This document shows positions 37,101 through 58,100 of a stretch of DNA of 64,000 nt, piece by piece (position 1 is the stretch's first letter; each line of letters begins with the position of its first letter). Location of the stretch: positions 10,664,001 through 10,728,000 of the forward strand of contig NC_079165.1 of the NCBI RefSeq assembly GCF_947568905.1. The letters run 5' to 3'. Source of the DNA: Ostrea edulis (lineage: Eukaryota). The notes beneath the pieces are model-generated. The model was not told the DNA's origin, did no database searches, and saw only the letters and a program-made list of their open reading frames with translations. Made by a program: the position numbers and the translations under genes.

Positions 37101-40100
37101 CAAAGCTGGAGAAGCTGTCACCATTGCCAAACTCATTGTGGAAGGTAAAGTCCCATCAAATGAAAACTCATAAACCACTCCAATGATAGGAATGATGATT
37201 CAAGGCGCAGGACAGGTTTGAAGGTTTTGATTTCAGTTTTTCTGATGAAGAATTGTTACTTTTACAGAGAAAAAAGAGGCTCCCAAATTCATCAAAAAAC
37301 TGGACAATGTGGATGTTGTGGAAAAGGGTACTGCCGTACTGGAAGTGGAGGTCTCAGGAAAACCCAAGCCACATGTCAGCTGGTGGGTTCTTTTATCATT
37401 TAGATAGATGTAATTGATGATTGCAATTAACAAACTGAAATAGCTTTGCAATGTATCACGATGTTCTCTCCTTTATCAGATTTGCCTATAAAACTGAAGT
37501 AGCATGTATATTTTCATATATCTATCTCTTATGATAATGTTGGAATGATTTATTTTTTCAGGCTTAGAGCAGATAAGGAACTTAAAGAGAGTGATCAAGT
37601 GAAGTTTGAGGTAGAGGAGAAGGTCCACAGAATGATCTTGAACTCTGTGACCCCATCTGATGCTGCCCTCTACACTGCCAAGGCCCATAACACAGCTGGA
37701 TCTGTATCCTGCAATGGACGAGTCAAAATTCAACGTAAGTATTTTTTCGGTAGATTTACTCCAGAAGAGAGAACACAAAACTGAAGTCCAATGATTTGTT
37801 CAGGACTAATGACATATATATAATTAATTTTCAGCTGCCAGACGTCCTTCCATCCAGCCCAGGAAGATGTCAGACACTTTGGTACCAGAAGATGGACAAG
37901 TCACATTCGAGTGTAAAGTGGAAGGTCTTCCACTTCCTGAGGTTAAATGGTAAGGCATCACTTCCATGTAGATTTTTTTTTTTCAACTTGTATTTCCTGC
38001 AAGTTCAAGAAAGGTAATGAAAGCAGATGAAAATACAGTATTTGGTAGAGGATATCCCCACAATTTTTATGCCCCCCTTCAAAGAAGAGGGGAATATTGC
38101 TTTGCACCTGTCAGTCGGTCGGTATGTCGGACGGCCTGTAGACTACATATTGTCCGCTCAATATCTTGAGAACCATTCACTTGATCGTAATGATAATTCA
38201 TATGTGGGTTGTTTATGAGTAGAAGAGGACCCCTATTGTTTTTCAGGTCAAAGGTCAAGGGTCAATCTACCCTGGACATAGGAAGACATTGTCCACTCAT
38301 TACCCCTATTGATTTTTAGGTCAAATTGGACATAGGAACACATTGTCCATTCAATATCTTAAGAACCCTTTGCTTGACAGACATCAAATTTGGTACACTG
38401 GTACATGTTCAGGAGAAGATGGCCTCTATTGATTTTGAGGTCACATGGTCAAAGTTCAAGGTTTAAACTGGACATAGTAATATATTGTTTCCTATATTTT
38501 AAGAATTAATTGCTTGATTGACACCAAACTTGGTACACTGGTACAACATAAGAAGTAGATGACCCCCGTTGATTTTTAGATCACATGGTCAATCCACTCT
38601 TGACAGGATGATATTGTTTGCTCAATATTTTGAATTGGTGATACTACTATCAATTAAATGATGCATGTGTATAACCCTTTTCAATTTTGCACCATGGGGA
38701 GCATATATGTGTTACAAACATCTCTTGTTTCCCTTCAGGTTTATCAATGATAAGGAGATTGAGGAAGGAGAAGATGTCCATTTGACCTTCAATCGCCGTG
38801 ACAGTACTTATTCCCTGGTCATTGACAAAGCCTCTGCTGAGTTACAGGGTACACTGAAAGCCGTAGCTGTCAGTAATGTGGGAGAGGATCTCGTTACTGC
38901 AGAACTAGAAATCCGAGGACAAGCACCTGTTTTCTCTGAAGTACCAATCAAGTGCACAATCCTGGAAGGTAAGTCATAGATACAGCATATGTTATTAAAA
39001 GTTAAAGGTTACATTAGAGGGACAGGAAATGCAGTATGTTGGATGAACATATTTAAATGAAAATATATTTTCCAGGAAACACTGCCATATTCCGTTGTAA
39101 AGTGAATGGTGAACCCACTCCAGGAATCCAATGGTCAAAAGGAAAGTGGAACAAGCTCAAAGATGGTGGTCGCTACAAGATTTTCCAGGATGAGACCACA
39201 GGGGAACATGTTCTAGAGATTGCAGACATCAAAAGGAAAGATGCTGGTACCTATTTAGTGAAGGCAACCAATGAGCATGGCAGCTCGGATGCTCCGGCTA
39301 CACTGATTGTGACGGACAAACCTGAAGAGGCTGAGGACTGGATGGCTAGACTCAAACATAGGTAACATATCTGTCACAGGTTAAACAAATATAATAGGGA
39401 GTTCATGTAATATCAGGAAAATTTTGATAACATTAACCACAGAGTTAAGGATTGTATGCCTGAATTTGCAGAGAAATAGAGAAGAAGGAAATCCCTGAAG
39501 AAGAACTCATACTACCAAGTCTGAAGCACGTAGAACAGGAAGGGAAACCTGAAGAGAAGAAGAAATACAAACCAGATGCCAAAGACATTGAAGAACCATC
39601 AGAATACGAGATCGTGTTCAAGAGGAGACAATCACAGGTGATTATAGAACTTCATTCTAAACTTTTACTTTCTTTGATAAAAAAAATTGACACAGAATAC
39701 AGACTTGTTATTATGACTCTAGGTAACTGTGTATATTGAAACACCAGTAGATATTAACTTTTTCTGGCAACTCATTTCAGATGCTAGAGAGGGTTTCAGA
39801 GGAAGTGCAAGAACTGGCTAAAAGAGAAAAACCAGAAAAAGAGGAAACTCCTGCCAAGAAAGAAGAAGCACCAAAGGAAGCTGGACCAGACGAGGTGGAC
39901 AAAGGATCGTACCAGCGTGCACGTCACGAGGCTGAGCTGGAGGAAGCAGAGGAGACCATGCTAACCATCCCTAAAGCTCAGTGGAAGGTCGTCAGACCAC
40001 TCAAGGACATGGCTGTGACTGAGACTGAGGAAGCAGTGTTCGAGTGTGAATTCAATGTTCCCAAAGTGAATGTCACGTGGAAGGTCAATGGTGAAGAGAT

Positions 40101-43100
40101 TGCACAATCTCCCAAACACATCATCAAATCAGAGGGCACAGTTCACATACTGATCATCACTAAGTGCAGAATACCAGATCAGGGGACGGTGTCATGCTCG
40201 TATGCTAAGCTCGAGACTACTGCCAAATTAACTGTCACAGGTGAGTTTCTACACATGAACATTTCACTCATCTTTACCTATGCTTTCAGGGAATATGCAA
40301 TTCAAAAATGTATTGTGCTTGTTAAAAGTATTGCTGTAAGGTTTTTTTAAAAAAAAATTTACAATCTTTCAGAACTAGTCAAAGAATTCACATTAAATCT
40401 AGAAGACACAGTAGTAGAAAAGGACAGTGATGTGACCTTCACCTGCAAGGTCAACGACGAAGATCTGGATGTGAAGTGGTTGATTGACAGCCAGACTCTA
40501 CCTGAGTCGGACAAATACTCGGTGATCTCGGAGGACGTGACACATTCTCTCACCATCAGAGATATCCAACCACAGGACTCCTGTGATGTCACAGCAACAT
40601 TCGGAGATGAATCAACCTCTGCTAGACTCTCTGTTGCAGGTCAATTTCACCAACATTTTTGTGATCCAATTTCCTACTATCAGTCAAATTAAAAAAAACA
40701 CTTTTGTCAGGTGCTGTGGGATAGGTTAAATTAGACTTCTTGACTTTGCTTTCCTCATAAATCAACTTTCAGTAATTTTGATGAAATGCTAAAACGTACA
40801 TCTTTTTTCACAGATGTCAAAGCAGACTTTGTCCTACCTCTCAAAGACCAAAAAGCCAAAGAAAACACCTCAGTAGAATTTGACTGCACCTTGACGATAT
40901 CCACAAACGATGTCCACTGGTTCCTCAATGACGTGGAACTCCACCCCACCGAGAATGTGGAAATTATAAAAGAAGGAACCAAGCACAAGCTAATCCTGAA
41001 AAATGTCAGCCCCCAACAAACCGGCCAAGTCACGGTCAGCGTGGGAGAGAAGAGTTCGACTGCTACTCTCATTGTTGAAGGTCTGTTTATGAGCTTAGTG
41101 TTTACACTTTTCTCTGCTTTGTTATTCATACATTTCTTTACCATTTGATGTTTGTTTGTCACTCATTCTGTCATGGTAGCTTCATTGTGAACTATTAATC
41201 CGTGTTGACTAGAGTGTCCATCTTCTAGGAATAAACTATCGATATACAGGCTTGCTTAGCATCAAGTCTATTTTCCATACAGCTGCTATCGGAGACTTTT
41301 TTTATGCATACAGTATCACTCAGTTTTAGAAGGTTTTCCATTGTTATGTTGAATCAGAAGCCAATGAAGACCCAGGAGAAATAACTTTTATTTTGTGAGA
41401 CTTTATTTTCACATGGATAAAATAATGTATTTATTCACTATCCATAACTTCAATGAATCATTATTTATTGCATGTAAGATTTTATTTGCGAGAACTAAGT
41501 TTTCCTGAATGGCTAGTCTCATGAAATTACACGTAAATAATGTTCTCACAAATGAAATGTGATTTACAGTAAACAATATCAGGAAAATAGCTATTTAAAG
41601 TACCTCGTATCTCTCAGTGTACAGCAGTATGGTGTTTACTAGTTCTAAGCTCTGATCTGGATTTCTTGAAAATATCTCAAACTTGATAATTTAACAGTCA
41701 AAATTTGAGCAAAATCTCAGACCAAGCTTCGATTTATGTTTCTTTTGAGAAATTCAGGACTGCATGGTCTCAATGCCATAAACTGAGAATAGACTGAAGT
41801 CTAAATTTTGAATCTAACTAACTTTTTAAATAATCTTCATAAACAAATAAAATTTTCAGTATATGTTTGCATTTAATCTTTTTTATAAACCAGCAGTTTT
41901 TTTAAACAGCTGTGCTAGATAAATATTAAGATATAAGTAAAATTTTGACTTAAGTTTATTCTCAGTTTAAGGTAATAAGAATTGAAAGACATTTATTTGT
42001 TTGTAGAAGTCCCTGTAGAATTCAGTGCAACATTAGCAGAACAGCGCGTGGAAGAAAATACAGAGTGCCACTTCACTTGTGAACTCAATAAGGAGGATGT
42101 CCCGGTCACATGGCACAAGGACACCAGTAAAATTGTGCCCAGCAACAAGTATCGTGTCGAGGACGTGGGAACCAGTCACACGCTGGTCATCAGCGACGTG
42201 AACAGGGAAGATGTGGCAGAATATTCTGTGACTGCCGGTGACGTACGAAGCACTGCCAGACTGCATGTCGATGGTGAGTAGCCTCACGCATATCCATCTC
42301 ATGAAAAATTCTGAAATTCTTTTTAACAATAACATATTCCAAAGTTCTAATGCATATATTTCAATCTATGTAAGCAATTATATATGTATTCCATGCATCT
42401 ATGTAATGAACAACACTAGTATTCAGAGATTAAAAAATCAATAATGATTCCTCATATACACGTATATTTAAGACGAAACGCAATTTTAATTCTGTACACT
42501 GTACCTGCATACAATGTATTGTTAAAGTGCATGACTGTGTAATATTAAGAGAAACCATTACAAATATTCTGACACATTTTCGATAAGTTTGAGCATGAGT
42601 GTTTAGTTTACCTCTATTTTTTTTTTATTTATCCACAGCATGGTCTGGTGGTTTGATAGAGGAGTTTGTCATTCAGATTTAAATAAACTGAAATGAAATT
42701 AAAAAAAAAAAAGATGACTATATATTCAGTGCTTTGTCAGAAAATTAATTCACAGAAATTTGGAATGTTTCACAAGCATGCATGGTGATTTCTTGGAAAT
42801 TCAAATGCGTAATTTGAGTTTTATATTTTTTGTTGTCATGTTGCACTAACCAGAGCATGTTCTTCTAATTACTTTACAGACTCGCTGGTCGAAATTCTAA
42901 CTCCGTTAAAATTATCTCGATCTCCCGTCACACAGGAAGTGACTCTGTCTTGCCAGTTATCGAAACAGATCACTCGTTGTGTGTGGTTGAAAGACGGAGA
43001 GCCAATTGAACTCTGTGATAAATATAGAATGACCTTCAGAGGTCATTACCACAATCTTGTAATCATTGACCTTGACATTGAAGATGAAGGAGTGTATTCA

Positions 43101-46100
43101 TTAACTGTGGATGACCTTAACACGTCATACTATGTTGTTAAGGAAGGTCGGTAGCCATGGTTGCAAAGATGGTGTGATTAACTTATCTATCTACAATATT
43201 TGAACTTGTCAAGCACAGGATTGAAGACAATGCACTGGCAATGTGATGTGATTAACTTATTCATGTATAATGATGAACTTGTCATGCAGATTTGGATCTG
43301 CTGAAAAGAAAGCACAGACAGTGTGATGTGATTAATTTATTAATGATTACAACTCTGACTGATTTAAACAGACACATTTGGATTAAAGATTTTCATGAAT
43401 TAATGAAAGCACATGAAAGAAATTTTGTGTCAGCACAATATTATATTCAGCAATTTATACGTGTAGGTGAACTTTGTATGTATGACTTATTTGTGACTTA
43501 TAATTTGTATTTTGTCTAATGTCTTTACTATTAATGCTCTCACACATGCTGCCGTGTTCATATAACTAGTGAATTGCATATCACAGCATGGTGTTAGAAT
43601 TAACCCACAGAATATCATAATCAAGAAAACAATGTTAAACTAAACTAAGGGAGGAAGCCCTGGAAATATACGTTATTCATTGGCACTAACATGGAATTAC
43701 CTGTACTCTGAAAAAAAAAAGAAATAATTCTTGGAATGACTGCCTGCTGTGAGCTCCAGTGGTAGTTTAATGTAATCCTATTGTTTGGGAACTGATACAA
43801 TGCAATCTCATTGGTGAGTTTTGAAATATTTTGTTTAAAAATATTTTGGAAATTTACAATTGATATTTGGTCGTAATTTAGATAATTGAATTGAATAGAT
43901 TATTAGCATGTGATGCATTAAAGAAACAGAAGAGCATGAAAAAGTTTAGTGTTATTTCTGAACAGCATGCGTATGGCATGATTTTGAAATAATTGGTCTA
44001 CTGCAGTTAAATATCCTCTTTTTTGTCTAACAATTACTCCCATCTCACAACAGAAAAACCACTAGAATTCATTGAACCTCTACAAGAAGCTACCTGCTCA
44101 GAAGGAGAAAATGTGACCTTCACTTGTGAGGTCAGCCAAGATCAGGTCAAGGCCACTTGGATGAAGGATGGTAAAGAACTGGTTCCCTCTGAGGATGTCG
44201 ATATTCAGGCTGTCGGAAAGGTGCACAAACTGACCCTGAAAAATGCTACACTGGACGACAGAGCAGAATACACTATCTGTGTCAAGGACAAGAAGAGCAC
44301 TGCACCACTCTTTGTTGAGGGTCAGTATGGTAGTGACAGTAATCAATCATCCGATTTTTATTTTTGTGTGATGTAAATGTGTTAATGTAAATTTTGTTTG
44401 AAATTGATGTTGGGGCACTAATGTATAATTTCATTTTCAGATAAGATGTGTTAATATTCTATAAGAGTGTTCCTCTGTCGGAAATTGATGTTGGGGCACT
44501 AATGTATAATTTCATTTTCAGATAAGATGTATTAATATTCTATGAAAGTATTCCTCTGTCTACTTGTAGAATCACCACTTGAGTGGGTGGTGTCTCTGAG
44601 AGATCGCTATGATATAGCGGAAGGTGACTGCATCTCAATGATTTGTGAGGTCAACAAGCCGAACGTGCCCGCCATGTGGCTGAAGGATGGGGAACAGATA
44701 ACTGTGGCTGACGGATACGAGATCATCATGGACGGCTGCCGCCACATCCTGCGCATTCCTTCCTGTGAACTGGAAGATGATGCGGAATATACAGTAATGG
44801 TGGGAGATTTGGAATCTATCACAAGCCTCTTTGTGGAAGGTATGAAGACAAGAAAAATCATTGATATATTGCAAAGGAAAATATACATCTGGTATAATTA
44901 TGTATATAGATATATACGTCAGTTGCAAAAAGAACTCCAGTTCTCATTATGTTTGTATTAATGTGTAATGCGTATATACATACCAATCTAACCTGCAGTT
45001 ACATATCACAAATTTTGAATTTAAGAAGAATTCGCAAATGTTTGATATTTGTAGAAGTCGTGCTTGAGTTCACACACAAACTGAACGATGCCACATTCAC
45101 TGAGGGTGAAATGTTCGAGCTCAGCTGTGTGCTGAGTAAGCCGGACGTACCAGTCACCTGGATGAAGAATCGGCAGCCTCTGACTCCCAGTGACAGAATC
45201 CGGATCCTGTGTGAGCGCTACAGACACGTCCTCCAGATCATGGAGGCTATTCCTGAGGACGAGGGCGAATACACTCTGATGTTGCCCAACAACACTGAGA
45301 CATCAGCTATTATCAAGGTCAAAGGTCAGTAAAACCCTATTGAAATAGTTTTCCTATTGTAAACAAATTCTATAAATTTGCATCTCAGTTTGACGTATTG
45401 ATTTATTCGTTTTAGTGCTTGTACAATAATATAGTTTTAACATTTGCTGAAACACATGTATGGGGAATAAGTTTTATCCATTATTAATTTGTGAAATTTC
45501 TAGAAAAACCAGCCAAATTCACCAAACCTCTTGGAGAGATAAAAGCCAAAGAGGGTGACAGTGTGACCTTGACCTGTGAACTTGATAAGCAGGATGTATT
45601 CTGCACGTGGCTAAAGGATGGAGAAGAACTGAAGCCTAGTGACCACGTCCAGATTTCTGCTGATGGTTTCACTCAACAACTCCTCCTGACTGATGTCACC
45701 ATTAAGGATACCGCTAAATACACCTGTGTGTGTGGTGATGTGTCTACAGAGGCCACCCTCCAAGTAGAAGGTAAGGATGTGTCCACTGTCATATATATAC
45801 ATGTTGTCATTCATTAATCACATGTTGTGAAGGACGGTTGTTGTAAATTTTGTAATAATTCTACCTTCATGCTCTCCTTACAATGTCATAATTTTAATTG
45901 TTGTGGTAACAAGATTATGGCTTACATAACCCTTTTCATGCATGTAAACTATTTCGATACAGCTAATGGGTTCCTGCACTTCCTTAATTTTTGCTTTCCT
46001 CACATCCTCCTGTATATCCTAACAGAATTCCCAGAGACCCAAGTAACAGAATTACCAGAAACCCCAATAACAGAAACTCCTCAAGAGACCCCAGAAACTG

Positions 46101-49100
46101 AAGAAAGAGAAGAGGAGGTCATAGTAACGGAGGCCTTAGTTACAGAAACCCCTGTAACAGAGGTCCCAGAAATTAAGGCAAAAGAAATTGAGGTCATAGT
46201 AACCAAGGCCCCAGAAACAGATGCCACAGTAACAGAAACCCCTGAAGCTGAGGTCACAGTAATTGAAACTCCTGAAGCTGATGTCATAGCAGAAGAGGTC
46301 CCAGAAACAGAGGCAAAAGAAATTGATGTCATAGTAACCGAGGCCCCAGAAACAGATGCCATAGTAACTGAGACCCCTGAAGCTGAGGTCACAGTAACAG
46401 AAACACCTGAAGCTGAGGTCATAGCAGAAGAGGTTCCAGAAACAGAGGCAAAAGAAATTGATGTCATAGTCACTGAGGCCCCAGAAACAGATGCCATAGT
46501 AACAGAAACCCCTGAAGCTGAGGTCACAGTAACCGAAACTCCTGAAGCTGAGGTCATAGCAGATGAGGTCCCAGAAACTAAGGCAACAGATATTGAGATC
46601 ATAGTAACCGAGACCCCAGAAACAGATGCCATAGTAACAGAGACTCCAGAAGCTGAGGTCACAGTAACAGAAACTCCTGAAGCTGAGGTCATAGCAGAAG
46701 GGGTCCCGGAAACTGAGGCAAAAGAAATTGATGTCATAGTAACCGAGACCCCAGAAAAAGATGCCATAGTAACAGAAACCCCTGAAGCTGAGGTCACAGT
46801 AACCGAAACTCCTGAAGCTGAGGTCATAGCAGAAGGGGTCCCGGAAACTGAGGCAAAAGAAATTGATGTCATAGTAACTGAGGCCCCAGAAACAGATGCT
46901 ATAGTAACAGAAACCCCTGAAGCTGAGGTCACAGTAACAGAAACTCCTGAAGCTGAAGTCATAGCAGAGGAGGTCCCGGAAACTAAGGCAAAAGAAATTG
47001 ATGTCATAGTAACTGAGGCCCCAGAAACAGATGCTATAGTAACAGAAACCCCTGAAGCTGAGGTCACAGTAACCAAAACACCTGAAGCTGAGGTCATAGC
47101 AGAAGAGGTCCCAGAAACAGAGGCAAAAGAAATTGAGATCATAGTCACTGAGGCCCCAGAAACAGATGCCATAGTAACAGAGACTCCAGAAGCTGAGGTC
47201 ACAGTAACAGAAACCCCTGAAGCTGAGGTCATAGCAGATGAGGTCCCAGAAATGGAGACAAAAGAAATTGAGATCATAGTAACCGAGACCCCAGAAAAAG
47301 ATGCCATAGTAACAGAAACCCCTGAAGCTGAGGTCACAGTAACAGAAACTCCTGAAGCTGAGGTCATAGCAGTAAAGGTGCCAGAAAAAGAGGTAAAAGA
47401 AATTGATGTCATAGTAACTGAGGCCCCAGAAACAGATGCCATAGTAACAGAGACTCCTGAAGCTGAGGTCCCAGTAACCGAAACTCCTGAAGCTGAGGTC
47501 ATAGCAGAAGAGGTTCCAGAAACAGAGGCAAAAGAAATTGATGTCATAGTAACTGAGGCCCCAGAAACAGATGCCATAGTAACAGAGACTCCTGAAGCTG
47601 AGGTCCCAGTAACTGAAACTCCTGAAGCTGAGGTCATAGCAGAAGAGGTTCCAGAAACAGAGGCAAAAGAAATTGAGGTCATAGTAACTGAGGCCCCAGA
47701 AACAGATGCCATAGTAACAGAGACTCCTGAAGCTGAGGTCACAGTAACAGAAACTCCTGAAGCTGAGGTCATAGCAGAAGAGGTCCTGGAAACAGAGGCA
47801 ACAGTAATGAAAGTCCCAGAAACAGATGCCATAGTAACAGAAACCCCTAAAGCAGAGGTGAAGGTAACAGAGACACCAGAAACTCTGGAGGAAGAGATCA
47901 AAGAAACTGAAGTTCCAGTAACTGAAATCCCAGCAGAGGAGACTCTAGGAATTGTGGCTATAGAAAAAGAGGTTAAAGCTACAGAGACAGAAGTCATCAT
48001 TACAGATGTACATGAGACAGAGGTGACTGAAGGGGAGGCCCAAGGAACAGAAACTCCAGAGGTGATAGATATAGAGGTCCAAGCACAGGAATCCCCAGTT
48101 ACAGAGACAACACAGGCAGAGGGCCCTGTGACAGGAGTTTCAGAGGAAGAGGTTTTAGTGACCATGACTACAGAGACAGATGTCTCAGTACCAGAAGCTC
48201 AAGAAACAACTCCAGAAAAAATAACCTTTGAGACAGATATTGAAGAAACTACAGCCACTGGAAAAGAAATCTCAGTGACAGGAGCCCTAAAGTCAGACGT
48301 GACAGTTACTGAGAAAGAGACCTTGGCAATGGTTACCCCAGAAACAGAGGTGACAGTGTCTGAGGAAGAGGCCTTGGTAATGGCTACCCCAGAAACAGAA
48401 GTGACAGTCTCTGAAACTGCCAAAAAGGAGGCTCCAGAAATAGATATCACAGTGACTGAAGTCTCAGAAAAAGAGGCCCCTGTTGAAGAGGCCATACCTG
48501 CAGAGGTTCCAGTTTCAGCAACAGAATTTCAAGATTCATTTGTCACAGAAGCAGACGTTCCAGATTCAGGGGTCACAGAAACAGAGACTGAAGAGGCAGA
48601 AACAACAGAGAAAGATGTCCCAGTTGCAGAAATTGTAGTAACGGAGGCCACAGAAGCAGATGTTACAGTGCCACAGGCCCCAGAAACAGTCGCACCAGAA
48701 ACACAGGTCCTAGTATCAGAGAAAACAATAACAGAATCTCTAGAGAAAGAATCTGAAGAATCTGTTGAGATGGAGATTCCATTGAAAGAGGCTCCTGCCA
48801 CTGAGGTCCCAGAAATGATTGAAACAAAGGTCCCAGGAGAGGAATCATTTGTGATGGACACTCCTGTGGTCCCAGTTTCAGAGAGCTCAGAAACTGAAGT
48901 TACAGTGACAGAAGTCCCAGAAGCAGAAGCTTCAGAAGAAGAGGTATTAGTGACAGAAACTCTAGAGGCCCCAATGACAGAGGTCTCAGAAGCAGAAGAC
49001 ACTGTCATCGAAATTTCAGAAACAGAGGCACAAGAAAAGGAAGCCTTTTTTACCAAACCAATGGAGGACCTTGGAACAGAAGAAGAAACAAATTTCCAAG

Positions 49101-52100
49101 AAAAAGATGTAATTTTGATAGAAACTCCAGATGCCCAAGATACAGAAAAAGATTTCTCTATGACAGAAATTTCTGAATCCGACGTGCATGTAAAAGAGAC
49201 TACCACAGCAGAAACCTTGGCAACAGAAATCTCAGTACCAGAAACTTCAACACCTGAAATCCCAACATCCTTCAGAACACCTCTCACTGACCTCTTTGCT
49301 AAAGAAAATGACACAGTAACCTTAACCTGTGAACTTGTTCAACCCAACATTCTATGCAAATGGCTTAAAAATGACTCTGAAATCAAACCTACTGACCACT
49401 CACAAATTTCCCATGATGGCTTTACACAACAGCTTGTACTAACTGGTGTTACTGTGGATGACACAGCTAAATATTGTTGTGTATGTGGTGATGTGTCTAC
49501 TGAAGCCATGCTGCAAGTAGAGGGTAACTAAAACTTACATCAATTATATAATCAAGAAATTTAACAAATCTTATCATTCTCATACAAATAAATCTTAATC
49601 ACAATTTTACCATTAATGAATTCATTAATTATTCCTTTGAATTTAAACAATTTGATTTATCCTAAGAGATTTTTAACCTATGATTTTAGAAGCACCATTC
49701 ACCTTTACCAAACCCCTCACTGACCTCACTGCCAAAGAGAAGGACACTGTAACCTTGACCTGTGAACTTTCCAAACCAAATATTCCTTGCAAATGGCTCA
49801 AAGATGGCACTGAAATTAAACCTAGTGACCATGCACAGATCTCCTATGATGGTTACACTCAGCAGCTCATACTAACTGATGTCAGTGTTGATGACACTGC
49901 CAAATATTCATGTCAGTGTGGTGATGTTTCATCCGAAGCCACACTTCAAGTTCAGGGTATTTAGCCAAGCAGTTTACATTATTTTCCTTTTAATCACATT
50001 TTTGTATTTGCAATTAATTTATCCTATCCTCAGATAACAATATTTTTCACTGACCTTTTCTAGAAGCACCTGCCACCTTTACCAAACCCCTCACTGACCT
50101 CACTGCCAAAGAGAAGGACACTGTAACCTTGACCTGTGAACTTTCCAAACCAAATATTCCTTGCAAATGGCTCAAAGATGGCATTGAAATTAAACCTAGT
50201 GACCATGCACAGATCTCCTATGATGGTTACACTCAGCAGCTCATACTAACTGATGTCAGTGTTGATGACACTGCCAAATATTCATGTCAGTGTGGTGATG
50301 TTTCAACTGAAGCCACACTTCAAGTTCAGGGTATGTGCTAGTTGTTTTAGCTATAGTTGTGTTCTTTTCATTCTGCAGACATGCCATGGTGTAGTGGTCT
50401 GACACCATTGTGATCGGCCATTGACTGTTAAGTCGTTAAGAATGTGGAAACCTATAGTTCTTAACTGTATTTGTTTGACGTTGTAGACTCGCTGAAATTC
50501 ATCCGAGAACTGACAGAGACGCGTGTAATTGAGGAGCACACAGTGACCTTGGAATGTGAGGTCAACCTGCCCGGCCTGACCGCAACATGGCTGAAGGACA
50601 AAGAACCTGTGGTCCTCAGAAAGTCCAACTCAATCCGTGTCAAAGACGGCATACACAGCCTTGTGATAGGTTCAGCTGAGATTGATGATGAGGCCGAGTA
50701 CACAGTACAGATAGGAGATATCTCATGTTCAGCTGCTCTCTTTGTGGAAGGTAAACTTTGATTAGATGGTATCTTGAGTTCTTAACGAAAAGACAATCTT
50801 TCTGTCTGTTTTTGAAACATTTAAACATAGATTGTTATGATAGTCTTTCACCAAAGAATTATGATTTACATGTATGATTGCAATTTTTGGGGGTAAATAA
50901 TTCATGTGTTTTTGCTATATTCTGAATTTGTATTCATCAACAGAGGCTCCTGTAGAATTCATCAAACCACTCAAGGACATTCAGGTCATGGAGAAGACCA
51001 AGGTCACTCTGGAGTGCGAGGTAAACAAACCTAATCTGATAGCCACCTGGTACCTGGAGGGGGAGGAGATCAAATCTGATGACAGAGTGGAACTAGTGGT
51101 TTATGACACAGTCCACCAGCTCATTATCCAGACCACTAAACTCACAGACGAGGGAAAATACACCATTGATGTGGAGGGCCAGAAATCCTCCTCTACACTG
51201 CTCGTAGACGGTAAGCTATCGTTTGGTGGATTTGTCGTTTTTATTGTGTTTCTCTGGTATTTGATTGTGTCCAAGCAAAAAGTACTAACTTACTCCTCAA
51301 CTGTCAAAATTTGTCAAAATAATTGTTTTGAATTCTCCTAAAACCTGTCGGACATGATTGTTTTGTAATTTGGGGGAGAATGGCTGCGGTGCATGTAAGT
51401 TATTATAAATGTGAAATAATCGTTCAACCCTCATCATGATTAACCACTACTGTGTTCTCCACACTCTGTGAAGCAAAAATGACTACCACTAAACTTTCAG
51501 CTAAAACCGGTGAGTGTACCTTTTATATATAACATGAAAATCTTCAAAATGTTACTATCATGTCTCCATTTTACCTTGCTCTCAGAATCCCCAGTCGAAT
51601 TGGTTGCACGCTTGCATGACATTTGTGTCCCGGCTAAAGGCACAGCTGTGTTTGAATGCGAAGTATCACTGCCTGGTGTCAAACCGCAGTGGTACAAAGA
51701 TGAAGAACCAATCACAATCAGCGATGGTTATGACATCAGAACAGATGGGACACACCACTATTTGTACCTAGAGAAAGTGGGACTTGATGACATCGGGGAC
51801 TATTCGGTCCAATTTGATGATGTGGAGTGTACTGCCACTCTTCAGATTGAAGGTAGCTGCAGGAGTATATACTAGTCATCACCATTAGGACAGACAGCGA
51901 TATATTTGTCTTTTGTTTCATTTTAACATGTTTTGATTTATTTAACCATTGCATGACCTTAGCATGTTTCTTCTCTTTATAACTACATGTATATTAAATA
52001 TTCCTCCATAAAGAGTACGGTTTTAGAACTTTCAGTTGGTATTTAATGTGGTAGATTTTCTTAATTTATTTTCTTTGAATATTTTTCATTCTTTAGTTCC

Positions 52101-55100
52101 ATGGAAATTTCTTGATATTTTGCCAAATTGAGTTGAGTTTTTGGAATAAATAGAAATGACATTTGTTCATAGAACCTCCTTTGAAAATCACTAAACCACT
52201 GGAAAAGAAAGAAGTTCCTGAGAAAGAACCATTGACCTTGACCTGTGAAGTCTCCAAACCAGGAGTCATGGGCAAATGGTTCAAGGACAACAAAGAAGTT
52301 TTACCCTCCGAAAATATTAAAATCATAGACGATGAGAATGTTCATAAACTGGAAATTCTGGATGCCACATTAGCTGACAGTGGAAACTACAAATGTAAAC
52401 TGGAGGACAAAGAAACCACCTGCAAGGTCGCTGTGAAAGGTCAGGATCACATGCAACATTATATCTTCTATTTGATTGATGAATTTAAAATCTGAAAATG
52501 AAAATATGAAGAGAATGTAAATTATTGGCTTTGTAAAATTTGCAGAAAAGCCTTTGGATTTCATCAAACCTTTGAAAGACACAGAAGTTGCAGAGGGTCA
52601 AGATATTGAACTCGAATGTGTAGTGTCCAAGAAAGACATTAAGGCCAAATGGCTGAAGAATAATAAACCACTGCCTGTGGACAACAGAGTCAAGGTCACT
52701 GCTGACAAGGACACACACAAACTGACCATCAGATCTGCAATTGTTGAGGACAAAGCAGAATACTGTGTCAAGATTGCTGATAAAACATCAACTGCTAAAG
52801 TCTTTGTAGAAGGTAGGAAATCAAAAAATTGACACGATACCTGTATAAGGTATTGGATCTTACAGTGTTAACTTACCAATACAAATTGACACGATACCTG
52901 TATAAGGTATTGAATCCTACAGTGTTAACTTAACAATACTTGTGATCCTACATGATGTATGACTTTGTCATTTATTTCGAATGACCTTTTCATTTCAGAA
53001 GAAGTAGTGGAATACGTTAGAAAACTTGCTGATGTGGAGGTTAAAGAGATTCCCTCTACCGTAACCTTTGAATGTGAGCTCTCTAAACCCGACATTGTAG
53101 TCAAATGGTTCAGAGATGGAAAACCACTGGGAGAGAGTGATAAATACCAGATGATTGTGGATAAGACTGTTCACAGACTGGTTATCGCAGATGTGGACGG
53201 AGAGGATGAAGGCGACTACAGCATTGTTGTTAGAGGGAAGAAATCAGAGGGAGAACTCATTGTAGAGGGTAAATATAGTATCATCATTCAAAATGAGACT
53301 CTTGTTTCTGTTGTTAGAGGGAAGAAATCAGAGGGAGAACTCATTGTAGAGGGTAAATATAGTATCACCATTCAAAATGAGACTCTTGTTTCTGTTGTTA
53401 GAGGGAAAAAAATCAGAGGGAAAACTCTTTGTAGAGGGTAAATATAGTACATGTATTATCATTCAAAATGAGACTCTTGTTTCTGTTGGTTGAAATACTG
53501 GTCATAAGCATGAAAATGATGTGATGTTTCAATTCTTGTTAATCAGTGAAGATTAGGTAAAGGGAAATAACTGGGATGTCACCCACATTCATTTTTGTCA
53601 GCAGGTGATAATAGTTTTGCAATATTGCACCCATTGAGCTCAAGTTAACATGGAGATAATTCTTTAGGATTGAGTTGAATATGAGTAGGGTTATATCTCA
53701 AACCAACAGCACTACAACATGAATCCCATGAAAATAAGTATGCATGCAATATATCCCAAGATTAACTCTATTTGCATCTGACAAAATGTGATGTCTCCTG
53801 GCAATAAGGCAATGACTAGGAAGAATTCACACTTTGGTTCTAATTGTTATAATGATCTTTATGTTCTTCTTCAATTTTCAGTACCTCCACAGCTTTTCTT
53901 GGACAAACAGTTTGAAGAGGAGGTTGTTTTGAAGGCTGGACAGTCCATGGCATTCGAGATTCCATTCAAAGGTAACCCACAGCCAAAGGTGACCTGGACC
54001 TACAACGATGAACCTCTTCCACAGGAGAAGAGAATTGAGAGTGAGACCATCTACAACATGACCACACTTAGACTCGGAAAGGTCAAGAGGTCAGACACAG
54101 GAAACTACACCCTTACTTTGGAGAACTCTGCTGGCAAAGTCTCTATAACCATCAAACTGACAGTATTGGGTATGTGTACGCTTATATGGGGAATTATATT
54201 TCAGCATGATTGTCCGCTTTAAGTAAAGTCATGAGTAAATTCACTTTTAAATGACCTAGGGGTATGTAACAAACTATCAAATTCAGATGTTTTGAAAGCA
54301 AATGGTGGTACCTGGTTAATAGCTGTGTTGAATTTCATGAATTTTGCAATATATTGATATGTTGTATGTAGACAAACCCAGTGTCCCACAAGAGTTAACT
54401 GCCCCTGAGGTCAATGCAGAATCCATCACTCTGAACTGGCAGCCTCCAGCAGACAATGGAGGCAGTGAAATCCTGGAGTACAGTATTGAAAAGAAAGAAT
54501 TCAACCGCAGAACATGGCAACAAGTTGGCACCACCAAAGATCTGACCTTCACTATTCCTAAACTCTTGGAAGGCAACAAGTACTTCTTCAAGGTCGCTGC
54601 CAGAAATGACATCGGCATTGGAGAAGCTGTAGAGCTGACAGAGGCTATCACAGCCAAGAATCCATTTGGTAGGGATCTGAAACTGAATATGTTGAATACT
54701 GATGATCATTCAGAGCAATGATGGTTATAAACACTCATTTCCTGTACTTGATGTTGATTTGTTGTTTCATTCTAACAGTGGTGCCCGATGCCCCTGATGC
54801 TCCAGTCATTTCAGACATCACAGCTACCTCAGCAGTTGTCACATGGCAACCACCAGCCAATGACGGTGGGTCCCCTGTCATCGGATACCGCCTGGAGAGG
54901 ATTTCTGGTTTCAGTGGACGATGGGTTTCTGTGACCAAGGATCTCATCCCAGAGATGACCTTCAGTGTCGCTGACCTTGTGGAAAATAACACCTATGAAT
55001 TCAGAGTTATTGCTGAAAATAAAGCTGGCCAGAGCAAGCCCAGTCCACCTTCAGAAAATACCAAAGCACTCAACCCTTGGAGTAAGTTTTGGTTGTATTC

Positions 55101-58100
55101 AATTCTTAAAGAATGGGAAGAAGTTTCTCATTCTAGGTCTTGTTACACATTTCATGTGAGTAGTATTTGTAACTTGTATTTCACTGTTGTAGCTAAACCA
55201 AGTGCACCAGGAACTCCAGATATTATCAAAACAGACAAAACCTCAGCTGACCTCAAGTGGACTCCACCCACAGAGGATGGGGGTGCTCCTATCACTAACT
55301 ATGTCATCGAACACCGCCCCAGTGGTGCCGTCCGTTGGACCCGAGCCAACAAGTCTCCCATCACAGACACCACATTTAGTGTACCTGACCTTAAGGAGGG
55401 ATCTGAGTATGAATTCCGTGTGTCAGCTGAAAACAAAGCTGGTGTTGGGCCAGCTTCAGAACCCACCAAATCTGTCAAGGTGGAGAAACCTATAGGTATA
55501 GAACATTTAAATATTTTACAGCACAACAAGAAGTCAATCATAAATGTTACATTTTGCTACATTATGGAATAAATTCAAACAGTATTCTATTCAAAAAGAA
55601 TAGAATTGGGCAACAGGTAATACCTATGTATACCCTCTCCATATAGAAATTTGAATTTGAAGTGGGATTATGGTTTTATTATCACCTGTTTCAGAGGGCA
55701 GAGCACCAAAAGTCGTGGAGAACTTGAAGGATGCTACCAGTATATCCCCAGGGGAAGTCACCTTAAAGTGTGACCTTGAACTGGGAGAACCATTAGCAGA
55801 AATAAAATGGTTCAAAGGACCAAAGGAAATCAAGAAAAGTCCAAAATATGTCACAAAACTCGAGAACAAGGTTGCCTCCATTGTCATCCATGAAACAGAA
55901 CCTCAGGATGCTGGTGTGTATTGTTGCCAGGCAACCAACCAGCTTGGACAAGTTCAGACTGAGGCAACTCTGGCAGTGCACAGTATGTACATTTTCTTAG
56001 TTGTGAAAAGTGGGGGGTTTTTTGTAATTCACTGGAAAAATCTTATTAGACCATGCAAATCAATCTTTATGCTTGCAGTTAGGCTAGTGAGAAACACCAT
56101 TAAAGCAGTTTTTAATCTATTCCTGCTGCCAATCTTTCCCTTTATAATTGCAGCACATCCCAAACTGGAATATGAAAATAAACTTAAAACTAAACAGCTG
56201 ATCAAGGTTGGACAGTCTATCTCCCTACAAGTGAACATTAGTGGTATACCCAATCCCACCGTCAACTGGACACTGAACAAGATCATCATCGAAAAATCCC
56301 CGAAGATCAGCATCGAGACTACAGACGACTTTAGCATGCTGACTGTGAAGAATGCTACACTGGATGACACAGGAGCCTATGCCATTACTGCTGAAAATGT
56401 GGTGGGCAAGGCTGAGGCAGAATTTAACGTCGCTGTTAGAGGTCAGTCAGTATCACCTTATATCAATAAAAGTACTAAATACTTTGTATGAGAGTGATTC
56501 TGTTTATGATATACATGCATTTATTACAATTCACTTGCATGTTCTGTATTCTTCAGACAAACCTGGAAAACCCAACAATCTCGAGGTTCTACAAGTCATG
56601 AAGGACTCTGTTGTGTTGTCATGGCAACAACCTACCAATACAGGTGGCTCAGACATTTCTGGTTACATCGTTGAGAAGCGTGATGCCAAACGTAATACAT
56701 GGGCACCCGTGGAAAATGTTGACAGTAACACCACAACCTATGCTGTACAAAAATTGGTAGAGGGCAATGAATACTTCTTCAGAGTATCTGCCAAAAATGA
56801 TATGGGCACTGGAGAGGCAGCTGAGATTGACAGAGGAACAATTGCAAAGAGTCCATTTGGTGAGTAAAATTGTAATGAACTTGCAGACCTTAAATTCTGG
56901 ATTTTTTAGCACTTTCAATAATTTTTCCCTGAAGTAATTTACAGAGAGGGGGTATGTTTATTTTGAGGTAAGCTGGAACTAAGTGTAGAGCAAAAGTAAT
57001 ATTTGCCAATGTTATTGTGCTATATTTAGATGTACCTGGGGCTCCAAGGAATCTTCAAGTCTCAAAGGTGACAAAGTCCAGCATCTCTCTGACCTGGGAG
57101 GTTCCTGAACAGGATGGTGGCTCCCCAGTAACTAGTTACATAGTGGAGCGCCGCCAGATGACCTCCACAAGGTGGACCAAGGCTCATAAACAACCCGTGA
57201 CAGAAACTGTGTTCACATCTACTGATCTCATAGAAATGGCAGAGTACAGCTTCAGAGTGACTGCTGAAAATGTTGCTGGCATTGGTAAACCCTGTGAACC
57301 AGTAGGACCCATTCTCACCAAGAGTCCGTTCGGTAATTAGCATTATTCTGGCATTTGTAATTCTGGTAAAAAGGTAAAAAAATTGATTTTCATGCAATGT
57401 TTTGAAGTAGGTTTGAATATTTATTTTCTACATTTCTTTTATAGATGTGCCAGATGCTCCTGGCAAACCTCAGATTTCTGAAGTGACCAAAGACACTGCA
57501 ACATTAACCTGGACACCACCTGAAAAAGATGGTGGAAATCCCGTCTTTAACTACGTCATTGAATACAAACCAACAAGAGCCTCCAAATGGATCGCAGCCA
57601 GTCACAATATCACTGTGGCAAAGACAGAGTTTACTGTGAAGGAGCTAACCGAGGGAATGGAGTATGAATTCAGAATTAAGGCAGAAAACCAAGCCGGACT
57701 CAGCAAACCCTCACCTTCCACCAGTGCTATCATCAAAGAACCCGTCAGTAAGTAGCCAGACTGATCTCCGAACTTACTTCTATAAAAGATAGCTGTGTTG
57801 TTTTATAGAGTGTAATCTTTATGTCCCTTCCTACATTGTATTGTTTAGAACTGATCAGTTGACTATACCACTGTGTTGTTCTGTGTTTGTAGGTGGAGAG
57901 GCACCCTCTGTACTGGAGGGGCTTCCAGATGTCAGTGTACTGCTGGGTGAAGACGCCACCCTCGAATGCCAGATAAGTGGCAAACCTGAACCCTCGGTTA
58001 CTTGGTAAGTCATCATGACAAGGATCCAGATCCAGATATGGAAATTCAGTTTTTTTTGTATGGAAATTGGAGTTAACTGTCTAAATGTTGTTACATTTTC

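What the first reader, a model, noticed from the sequence alone, without database searches (positions are those of the whole stretch)
38739..54169. A myosin-binding protein C / IGFN1-like module embedded in an invertebrate giant protein
Seen: Ig 16 has QWSKGKWNKL, followed by DWMARLKHR, then EEPSEYEIVFKRRQSQ|MLERVSEE. After it, domain style switches abruptly to short-FG-hairpin Ig domains on 264-270 nt exons, then to Ig/Fn3. Known (recalled sequence): cardiac MyBP-C C1 has KWFKGKWVDL, and its M-motif has PKA sites, DFSSLLKKR and PPSEYERIAF...[10 protein letters not shown], followed by C2-C4 Ig domains; MyBP-C is generally regarded as vertebrate. Inference: four matches in the same order (KGKW, LKxR, PSEYE..F, MLxR) suggest homology, with a PKA site (KRRQS) inside the would-be tri-helix segment. 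This bears on the origin of MyBP-C.
Basis: partly seen in the sequence, partly recalled or inferred. Interest (0 to 1): 0.85.

Follow-up and report, generated by a model that had tools for sequence, protein, structure and literature searches.

The report
Titin N2A-like hinge in a bivalve
A giant titin-like muscle gene of a bivalve has, where its long Ig domains give way to short ones, an Ig–linker–Ig junction related to the titin N2A element and the regulatory N-terminus of MyBP-C, but the three-helix core of the vertebrate linker is not recognisably conserved.

Summary
The quoted peptides are present, and RNA contigs confirm all four splice junctions. The Ig type switches exactly at this linker to 18 short Igs. 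The 15 of their exons checked are 267 or 270 nt. Ig/Fn3 follows.

Ig16 belongs to the small class of Igs that precede this kind of linker in titin (I80), MyBP-C (C1), IGFN1/IGSF22, an amphioxus protein and a crinoid "twitchin-like" protein. Support comes from reciprocal best hits, a W-x-KGK-W/F signature found only in that class, and a best tree that unites the class. The DWMARLKHR motif lies 68 residues after the Trp, as in vertebrate titin (68–69).

The nearest counterpart is titin's own N2A element (38% identity, E 3e-19), not MyBP-C C1 (28%, E 4e-4). So this is an old titin element, not an embedded MyBP-C.

The "PSEYE…MLER" similarity to the tri-helix bundle is not significant. Pfam THB gives no hit, my linker HMM scores no better than shuffles, and hhalign gives P 0.04–0.2. 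KRRQS is a predicted kinase site, conserved in a close relative and in one distant invertebrate fragment.

The function is inferred only: a phosphorylation-tunable filament-docking hinge at the start of the spring.

The parts
38739..38968 (+). Exon A: end of the preceding long-type Ig and first strand of Ig16
   Evidence: AG/GT borders and open frame. The junction 38968|39076 is seen in RNA contigs of runs X1, X2 and X3.
39076..39361 (+). Exon B: body of Ig16 with W-S-KGK-W (39132-39149) and, 68 residues after that Trp, the DFRxxL-type motif DWMARLKH(R) (39336-39361)
   Evidence: Pfam I-set E 1e-17. Reciprocal best hit with titin I80, the IGFN1 N-terminal Ig, the amphioxus and P0137 Igs, and MyBP-C C1. 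38% identity and E 3e-19 to elephant titin I80, with the alignment running through the motif. Signature and spacing.
39472..39637 (+). Exon C (166 nt): charged unique sequence EIEKKE..LKHVEQEG.., PSEYEIVF (39596-39619) and the predicted basophilic-kinase site KRRQS (39620-39634)
   Evidence: Both junctions are RNA-confirmed. The first 42 linker residues align to the crinoid P0089 linker with z 7.1 and 0 of 1000 shuffles as good. 95% identical in the related bivalve locus L002. KRRQS is also in fragment P0146. No Pfam family. AlphaFold2 on this exon alone puts a helix at residues 44-54, block pLDDT 86-91.
39781..40240 (+). Exon D: MLERVSEEVQELAKREK, an E/K/P-rich spacer, then Ig17, the first short-type Ig (about 39976-40240)
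   Evidence: RNA-confirmed junctions. Pfam I-set E 4e-11 at residues 69-152. Best PDB matches are titin I81-I83 (7ahs), then cMyBP-C C3, then other titin Igs. Falls in the short class. The AlphaFold2 single-sequence model is poor, pLDDT 45.
40373..40639 (+). Exon E (267 nt): Ig18, short type, one Ig per symmetric exon
   Evidence: RNA-confirmed. Pfam I-set E 8e-14. Best PDB matches are titin I9-I11 and I81-83, then cMyBP-C C4 and obscurin.
40814..45770 (+). Seven further short-type Igs (starts 40814, 42007, 42880, 44054, 44570, 45055, 45504), each on a 267- or 270-nt phase 1-1 exon
   Evidence: Domain scan and class assignment. Exon lengths.
46020..49258 (+). PEVK-like, E/T/P/V-rich repeat segment between the two runs of short Igs (start approximate)
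   Evidence: Read from the ORF 45827-49531. Borders not verified by RNA.
49259..53268 (+). Nine more short-type Igs
53893..54169 (+). Ig that opens the Ig/Fn3 (A-band-like) part; Fn3 domains follow from 54344
   Evidence: Pfam I-set E 2e-20; fn3 E 4e-14, 2e-17 and 7.5e-35.

Best explanation
Positions 38739-40639 encode the junction between the long-Ig array and the short-Ig spring of a bivalve titin-like protein.

The junction has four parts: (1) an I80/C1-type Ig with the loop W-x-KGK-W; (2) a basic DFRxxL-type motif (DWMARLKHR) at the same distance from that Trp as in vertebrate titin; (3) the rest of a roughly 135-residue charged unique linker, with a predicted PKA/CaMK-type site (KRRQS); (4) the first of 18 short Igs. 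The 15 short-Ig exons checked are skippable.

It is the invertebrate counterpart of the module known in vertebrates as titin N2A (I80-UN2A-I81-83), MyBP-C C1-M-C2-C4 and IGFN1 Ig-THB-Ig. It is closest to titin's own N2A. Shown here: homology of Ig16 and of the first ~40 linker residues, and the conserved long-to-short architecture.

Inferred only: like N2A, the M-domain and molluscan twitchin linkers, it acts as a docking or hinge site for thin (and perhaps thick) filaments at the start of the extensible region, with binding tuned by phosphorylation at KRRQS. The canonical tri-helix bundle is either too diverged to recognise or was never present. The crinoid homologue has no room for one.
For: Colinear best HSP of the spliced module with the N2A region of vertebrate titin fragments: E 1e-41 against 1e-10 for the next HSP in P0159.

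Ig16's top hits are P0137, amphioxus P0047, fourteen titin I80 domains and IGFN1. In the reverse search each of these, and MyBP-C C1, hits 39075-39314 best among about 33 window Igs.

W-x-KGK-[WF] occurs in 6 of 182 Ig domains, and all six precede such a linker. In 236 proteins (417,789 aa) it and the D-phi-xxx-L-[KR]-[KH]-x motif occur only in this module. The spacing is 68-69 in titin and 68 here.

FastTree joins all nine linker-preceding Igs in one clade, SH-like support 61. With IQ-TREE the label is clustered (0 of 500 shuffles as low). The tree constrained to hold them together is 6.9 lnL units better than the free search, p-AU 0.68.

In titin, MyBP-C, IGFN1, amphioxus, the crinoid, P0137 and the window, the linker always sits at a long-to-short Ig transition.

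Linker chain: window to crinoid z 7.1. Crinoid to vertebrate-linker HMM 13.2 bits, with 0 of 2000 shuffles as good.

The linker is 95% conserved in a related bivalve. KRRQS recurs at similar spacing in P0146. The module is transcribed inside the long mRNA.

Literature: N2A is Ig80-uN2A-Ig81-83, is phosphorylated by PKA and is reported to bind F-actin and CARP (PMC8305307). An M-domain actin-binding sequence was first found through homology to molluscan twitchin (PMC7721898).
Against: The linker beyond its first ~40 residues has no significant similarity to UN2A or the M-motif.

A motif HMM built from vertebrate sequences alone does not pick out DWMARLKHR in the six-frame window. The regular expression was written after seeing the window's variant.

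Ig trees on ~90 columns are weakly supported: SH 61 for the clade, and the free IQ-TREE does not recover it.

The Igs after the linker do not form one clade.

The PEVK-like segment follows nine Igs after the linker, not three as in vertebrate N2A.

No binding or phosphorylation data exist for this protein. AlphaFold2 on single exons was uninformative for tertiary structure.
Confidence: 0.7

Rival explanations
1. One reading: a genuine MyBP-C-type M-motif. The linker folds into a tri-helix bundle (PSEYE..F helix, MLER helix) with a PKA site inside it, and behaves like C1-M-C2 (myosin S2/actin binding switched by PKA).
For: The order of motifs matches. hhalign aligns EPSEYEIVFK..QSQMLERV with PKEYEKIA..YGITDxRGxL at P 0.038. 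The distance from PSEYE to AKREK (31 residues) is close to that from PKEYE to LKKEK in titin (30), counted from the sequences printed. AlphaFold2 predicts a confident helix starting at EYEIVF. The flanking Ig and the first motif are homologous. Amphioxus, an invertebrate, has a canonical THB after the same Ig type.
Against: No Pfam THB hit and no PDB MyBP-C hit at E up to 10. HMM score no better than shuffles. z 0.5-1.5 against MyBP-C linkers. The YGITD(F/L)RG core is replaced by KRRQSQ. The segment aligned to helix 1 carries a proline (LILPSL) and about 19 extra residues before PSEYE. MAFFT and BLAST each choose a different register for this region. The crinoid homologue has no such segment. 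The MyBP-C phospho-loop upstream of the DF motif is absent.
Confidence: 0.15
2. Ordinary interdomain linker. The resemblances (KGKW, LKxR, PSEYE, MLxR) are chance or convergence in E/K-rich sequence between generic I-set domains.
For: The linker is E/K/R-rich, and most pairwise and profile tests of the linker are not significant. Ig domains are numerous and similar, and tree support is low.
Against: Reciprocal best hits in both directions across five protein families. The W-x-KGK-W/F signature is exclusive to linker-preceding Igs. Identical spacing to titin. z 7.1 to the crinoid linker. The same long-to-short architecture in seven proteins. 0 of 500 label shuffles as clustered.
Confidence: 0.08
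3. Twitchin-type catch linker. The segment is the titin-like paralogue of the bivalve twitchin interdomain linker that carries a DFRXXL motif and PKA sites. It tethers thick and thin filaments when unphosphorylated. This is a special case of the best explanation, not an opposite.
For: DWMARLKHREIEKKE..LKHVEQEG aligns without internal gaps to DFRSLLKHREVERRE..LKHVEGEE of a crinoid protein named twitchin-like. Harris 2020 (PMC7721898) links an M-domain actin-binding sequence to twitchin. An RRxS site is present.
Against: The position of the twitchin linker (between Ig7 and Ig8) is from my memory only. The motif has W and M where DFR is expected. Twitchin is a different gene elsewhere in this genome (unchecked note).
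Confidence: 0.3

Closest known systems
Vertebrate titin N2A element (I80 - UN2A - I81-I83, before PEVK)
   Same: Same gene family. An I80-type Ig with W-x-KGK-W; a D-phi-xxx-LKK motif 68-69 residues after the Trp; a unique charged sequence of ~100-135 residues split over small exons; followed by short-type Igs and a PEVK-like segment. Best colinear BLAST match. PKA phosphorylation and actin/CARP binding are reported for N2A (PMC8305307).
   Different: The THB core of UN2A (PKEYEKYARMYGITDFRGLL) is not recognisable. Nine Igs rather than three lie before the PEVK-like segment. In the elephant titin fragment the Igs before I80 are of a third type, whereas here they are long-type. CARP and calpain-3 binding are unknown.
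MyBP-C N-terminal regulatory module (C1 - M-motif - C2-C4)
   Same: An Ig with W-F-KGK-W, a DFSxLLKKR motif, then a linker, then three short-type Igs. C1 finds Ig16 as its only window hit. C1 lies in the nine-member clade.
   Different: C1 is only 28% identical (23.5 bits) and has insertions. MyBP-C has a phospho-loop before the DF motif and a clear THB after it; neither is found here. MyBP-C is a stand-alone protein of ~1,200-1,300 aa, whereas this is an internal part of a giant transcript.
IGFN1 / IGSF22 (P0135, P0311) and amphioxus 'obscurin-like protein 1' (P0047)
   Same: A long-type Ig, DFKKKLKKR (IGFN1), THB, then a run of short Igs. Amphioxus P0047 is Ig16's second-best hit (40%, 68.6 bits) and has W-Q-KGK-F.
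   Different: Both have a canonical THB (66-70 bits against my THB profile). IGFN1 lacks KGKW. Amphioxus lacks the first DF motif.
Crinoid 'twitchin-like' protein XP_033116214 (P0089); by extension the molluscan twitchin linker with DFRXXL and PKA sites
   Same: The best linker match (z 7.1). Two blocks, D-phi-xxx-LKHRE-phi-E and LKHVE-x-E, at the same spacing. Long Ig before and short Igs after.
   Different: The crinoid linker is only 48 residues and ends where the window's PSEYE/KRRQS part begins. Its Ig lacks KGKW. Comparison with Mytilus twitchin itself was not possible.
MLCK-type DFRxxL actin-binding motif
   Same: D-aromatic-x-x-x-L followed by basic residues. The same gene has DFRTLLK and DFREVLKK exons upstream.
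   Different: Here the motif is DWMARL (W for F, M for R). Actin binding is untested.

Membership tests
MyBP-C M-motif / Pfam THB (PF18362) | Match to the tri-helix bundle profile | tested here: not met
   No THB hit at E up to 10 for exon C, exon D or the junction peptide. The same scan finds THB in fish titin P0095 at E 2.7e-5. My own linker HMM gives -4.5 bits, no better than shuffles. hhalign P 0.038, probability 1.4%.
MyBP-C M-motif / Pfam THB (PF18362) | Preceded by an Ig with the W-x-KGK-W loop | tested here: met
   WSKGKW at 39132-39149. The signature is exclusive to linker-preceding Igs.
MyBP-C M-motif / Pfam THB (PF18362) | Phosphorylatable loop (RRxS sites) upstream of the DFSxLLKKR motif | tested here: not met
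   The motif follows Ig16 after 8 residues with no Ser/Thr. The only RRxS (KRRQS) lies about 50 residues downstream.
MyBP-C M-motif / Pfam THB (PF18362) | Stand-alone C0/C1-C10 protein of ~1,100-1,300 aa | tested here: not met
   The exons are spliced into a long transcript with upstream and downstream Ig exons. At least 33 Igs, PEVK-like exons and Fn3 domains lie on the same strand.
Titin N2A element | I80-type Ig as reciprocal best hit | tested here: met
   (38% identity, E 3e-19).
Titin N2A element | D-phi-xxx-LKK motif at fixed distance after the Ig | tested here: met
   Offset 68 here against 68-69 in ten titin fragments. Caveat: the pattern was widened to admit W and H, and a vertebrate-only motif HMM does not rank the site.
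Titin N2A element | Helical unique sequence homologous to UN2A | tested here: inconclusive
   z 4.5 against elephant titin but 0.5-1.4 against two fish titins. hhalign P 0.21. One confident helix is predicted in exon C.
Titin N2A element | Followed by short Igs and then PEVK | tested here: met
   Nine short Igs, then an E/T/P/V-rich repeat exon at about 46.0-49.3 kb; vertebrates have three Igs.
Titin N2A element | Binding of CARP/MARPs, calpain-3, F-actin | not testable with these tools
   Needs biochemistry.
Twitchin DFRXXL/PKA linker | Sequence similarity to the bivalve twitchin interdomain linker | not tested
Only a crinoid 'twitchin-like' protein was compared (z 7.1).
Twitchin DFRXXL/PKA linker | PKA-dependent filament binding | not testable with these tools
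   KRRQS fits the RRxS consensus by reading only.

The most novel reading that the evidence does not exclude
The Ig(W-x-KGK-W) - DFxxLKK - regulatory linker - short-Ig module is ancestral to Bilateria and originally belonged to titin-like giants. Under this reading MyBP-C and IGFN1 arose in chordates from a titin segment spanning the N2A-like junction and the first Ig/Fn3 repeats. The bivalve linker would be a working, PKA-switched tether between filaments: an invertebrate functional equivalent of the M-domain inside titin.
Probability: 0.25. Interest if true: 0.75.

Novelty: new variant of a known kind. Interest (0 to 1): 0.55.

Why it matters
N2A is treated as a vertebrate signalling hub of titin, and MyBP-C as a vertebrate invention. 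The N2A review I read does not mention MyBP-C (PMC8305307), and the 2025 titin-evolution paper mentions N2A only as a vertebrate isoform name (PMC12198301).

A recognisable counterpart of the I80/C1 Ig and its basic motif, at the same architectural position, occurs in a mollusc, a crinoid and other invertebrates. That places the scaffold of this module before the protostome-deuterostome split. It also ties together three vertebrate modules (N2A, C1-M-C2, IGFN1).

Two questions become testable. Is the tri-helix bundle a chordate addition? Did phosphorylation-tuned filament docking exist in the ancestral titin?

It also offers a concrete candidate site (KRRQS) for cAMP-dependent regulation of a second giant protein in bivalve muscle, besides twitchin.

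Tried and rejected
- phmmer of the exon C|D junction peptide against all PDB chains, which include full-length cMyBP-C 8g4l: only spurious hits.
- Pfam on each exon and on the junction: only Ig families.
- The search of protein representatives with exon D: the top 150 were dominated by obscurin and multi-Ig proteins through summed Ig scores. It was useful only through side hits P0095, P0089, P0135, P0137, P0146, P0047.
- Profile search for fragments (A1): only exon-level ORFs, none spanning the linker, because spliced proteins exceed the length filter.
- The look-up of encoding contigs for P0113 and P0147: no DNA served. L006 and L008 (the P0146 clade): upstream exons not on the contigs.
- Vertebrate-only motif HMM on the six-frame window: does not rank DWMARLKHR; the best hit is the upstream DFRTLLK exon at 0.2 bits.
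- AlphaFold2 of exon D alone: pLDDT 45, unusable. Of exon C alone: secondary structure only.
- AlphaFold2 of the spliced Ig16-linker-Ig17 was left out, because a spliced protein has no reference and I did not type a long sequence.
- Orthology of Ig17 with I81 or C2 specifically: rejected. The Igs after the linker share only the short class.
- Papers on twitchin (PMC3003364, PMC1483069) are not held.

Full report
**What is there.** The window is a stretch of one giant muscle gene on the + strand. Its parts, in order:
- an 8.6-kb E/V/P-rich exon;
- long-type I-set Igs with short linker exons;
- the region in question;
- 18 short Igs interrupted by a second PEVK-like exon;
- from 54.3 kb on, Ig/Fn3 repeats.

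A twitchin gene is noted elsewhere in the genome, so this is a different, titin-like gene (unchecked note).

**The observation.** I spliced five exons: 38739-38968, 39076-39361, 39472-39637, 39781-40240 and 40373-40639. Logan contigs of three RNA runs carry exactly these four junctions. One 4.5-kb contig continues into upstream and downstream exons, so the segment is an internal part of the long mRNA and not a nested gene.

The change of Ig style is real and sharp. In a tree of 182 Ig domains, Ig16 and nearly all window Igs before it are in a 'long' class. All 18 Igs from 39976 to 53001 are in a 90-member 'short' class with SH-like support 99. Fifteen of fifteen short-Ig exons tested are 267 or 270 nt, phase 1-1.

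**Direct tests of the MyBP-C reading.**
- The junction peptide finds no MyBP-C chain in the PDB and no Pfam family at E up to 10. The same Pfam scan does detect THB in a fish titin fragment.
- Ig16's best PDB relatives are titin I65-I70 and Robo. Within full-length cMyBP-C its best stretch is C10, not C1.
- Ig17 and Ig18 are nearest to titin I81-I83 and I9-I11, then MyBP-C C3/C4 and obscurin.

**The turn.** Among the hits of the exhaustive search was P0095. It has an Ig with VKWMKGKWRQV..GGR, then a linker with a THB hit, then a short Ig. Its relatives are named titin, and nearly all carry PF18362. This is the N2A element of vertebrate titin, Ig80-uN2A-Ig81-83 (PMC8305307).

Laid side by side, titin UN2A (..GDLRAKLKKTPS..IDIVELLRNVDPKEYEKYARMYGITDFRGLLQAIE..) and the MyBP-C M-motif (..[47 protein letters not shown]..) are plainly homologous. 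IGFN1/IGSF22 (P0135) and an amphioxus protein (P0047) have the same unit.

**Where the window fits.** The spliced module gives one colinear best HSP over the N2A region in most of the vertebrate titin fragments (E 1e-41 in P0159, against 1e-10 for the next HSP).

Ig16's best hits among about 880 HSPs are, in order:
- an unnamed invertebrate protein, P0137 (44%);
- amphioxus P0047 (40%);
- fourteen titin I80 domains (36-41%);
- IGFN1 (35%).

In the reverse direction I80, the IGFN1 Ig, the amphioxus Ig, the P0137 Ig and even C1 each hit 39075-39314 best among all Igs of the window. In direct comparison, exon B against elephant I80 gives 63.5 bits, 38% identity and E 3e-19, with the alignment running through DWMARLK/DLRAMLK. 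Against MyBP-C C1 it gives 23.5 bits, 28% and E 4e-4.

**Signatures.** W-x-KGK-[WF] occurs in 6 of 182 Ig domains, and all six precede this kind of linker. In 236 fetched proteins (417,789 residues, mostly obscurins and titins) that loop and the motif D-phi-xxx-L-[KR]-[KH]-x occur nowhere outside the module. The distance from the Trp to the Asp is 68-69 in titin and 68 in the window. I widened the second pattern after seeing the window's W and H. A motif HMM built from vertebrates alone does not rank the site. The motif therefore counts mainly through its position.

**Trees.** FastTree places exactly the nine linker-preceding Igs in one clade, with SH-like support 61. They are the window's Ig16, P0137, IGFN1, two I80s, amphioxus, the crinoid and two C1s. 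A careful IQ-TREE on 47 rows leaves them in an unresolved cluster of 20. The label is still far more clustered than 500 shuffles. The tree constrained to hold them together has a likelihood 6.9 units higher than the free search (p-AU 0.68). I defined the group by position in the protein, not from the tree.

**Architecture.** In titin, MyBP-C, IGFN1, amphioxus P0047, crinoid P0089, P0137 and the window, the linker always lies between a long-type Ig and a run of short-type Igs. The Igs after the linker share the class but not a clade.

**The linker itself.**
- Its first 42 residues align without internal gaps to the whole 48-residue linker of the crinoid protein: DW/DF-xxx-LKHRE-I/V-E.. and LKHVE-Q/G-E. 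This gives z 7.1, with 0 of 1000 shuffles as good.
- The crinoid linker in turn scores 13.2 bits against a vertebrate-linker HMM, above all 2000 of its own shuffles.
- The rest of the window's linker is not demonstrably related to the tri-helix bundle. The HMM gives -4.5 bits, with 875 of 2000 shuffles as good. Local alignment to MyBP-C, IGFN1, amphioxus and two fish titins gives z 0.5-1.5; only elephant titin reaches z 4.5. hhalign gives P 0.21 for the whole linker and 0.038 for the THB core.
- BLAST, MAFFT and hhalign each choose a different register around PSEYE.
- The linker is nevertheless constrained: 95% identical in a related bivalve locus where the E/K spacer varies more. The words E-x-E-I-x-x-KRRQS-x-LE recur about 66-70 residues before the first short Ig in fragment P0146, whose Igs are only about 37% identical. 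By the shuffle test that similarity alone is not significant (p 0.19).
- AlphaFold2 without an alignment gives a confident helix from EYEIVF to the exon end, and nothing usable for exon D.

**Reading.**

Shown: this is the bivalve counterpart of the Ig-linker-Ig(short) junction that vertebrates have in titin N2A, MyBP-C and IGFN1. It is nearest to titin's own.

Not shown: a tri-helix bundle, PKA phosphorylation, or any binding.

Inferred from what is reported for N2A (PKA site, actin and CARP binding; PMC8305307), for the M-domain, and for twitchin (PMC7721898): a docking or hinge site for filaments at the start of the extensible segment, tunable at KRRQS. Because the crinoid homologue lacks the second half of the linker, and amphioxus and vertebrates have a clear bundle there, the bundle may be a chordate addition. 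Alternatively the bivalve segment is a degenerate or independent insertion. The data do not decide.

**Scores.** The finding is real and more interesting than an ordinary linker, but its most striking claim (M-motif homology with an internal PKA site) is the unsupported part. I rate it a new variant of a known kind, interest 0.55.

Noticed in passing
window 38600-38743: The intron sequence just upstream of exon A is a very high-copy element. Summed contig depth is about 46,000-57,000 in run X19 (kind not on record; it also covers the introns), against 2-5 over the neighbouring unique sequence. Many variant loose ends.
   Followed up: no
P0153:2466-2525, P0155:1639-1698 (vertebrate titin) against P0281, P0288 (MyBP-C): Titin's UN2A and the MyBP-C M-motif are clearly homologous over the DFxxLKK motif and the whole tri-helix bundle, and both follow a W-x-KGK-W Ig. 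The N2A review I read does not mention MyBP-C. The bundle's third helix starts with a DFRxxL-like word (TDFRGLL), like the starfish MLCK word TDFRQLLK.
   Followed up: partly
window 44570-44839: In the 47-row IQ-TREE this short Ig pairs with MyBP-C C2 (95/86). C2 of two species hits it best in the window (52-59 bits, up to 39.5% identity).
   Followed up: partly
window 39076-40240: Exon C (166 nt) cannot be skipped alone without a frameshift. Exons B+C+D sum to 912 nt and could be skipped together in frame. No skipping was seen in the contigs laid.
   Followed up: partly
window 40373-53268: All 15 short-Ig exons tested are 267 or 270 nt and phase 1-1. Each is individually skippable, like the differentially spliced I-band Igs of vertebrate titin.
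   Followed up: yes
window 12050 and 12471: DFRTLLKSTSVKSK and DFREVLKKVSAENK on short exons. They are the same kind of motif as DWMARLKHR, and the first scores best in the window against the vertebrate motif HMM.
   Followed up: partly
P0137:160-320: The closest relative of Ig16 (44%) comes from an unnamed Logan assembly. Its linker is 166 residues, full of Asn/His runs, with RRRRRK and RRRPR but no DF motif, so the linker is highly plastic between lineages.
   Followed up: no
runs X1, X2 laid on window 38739-40639: Transcripts of 'organism A' differ from the window at about 2% of exon positions with identical splice sites: a sister species or a divergent haplotype.
   Followed up: no
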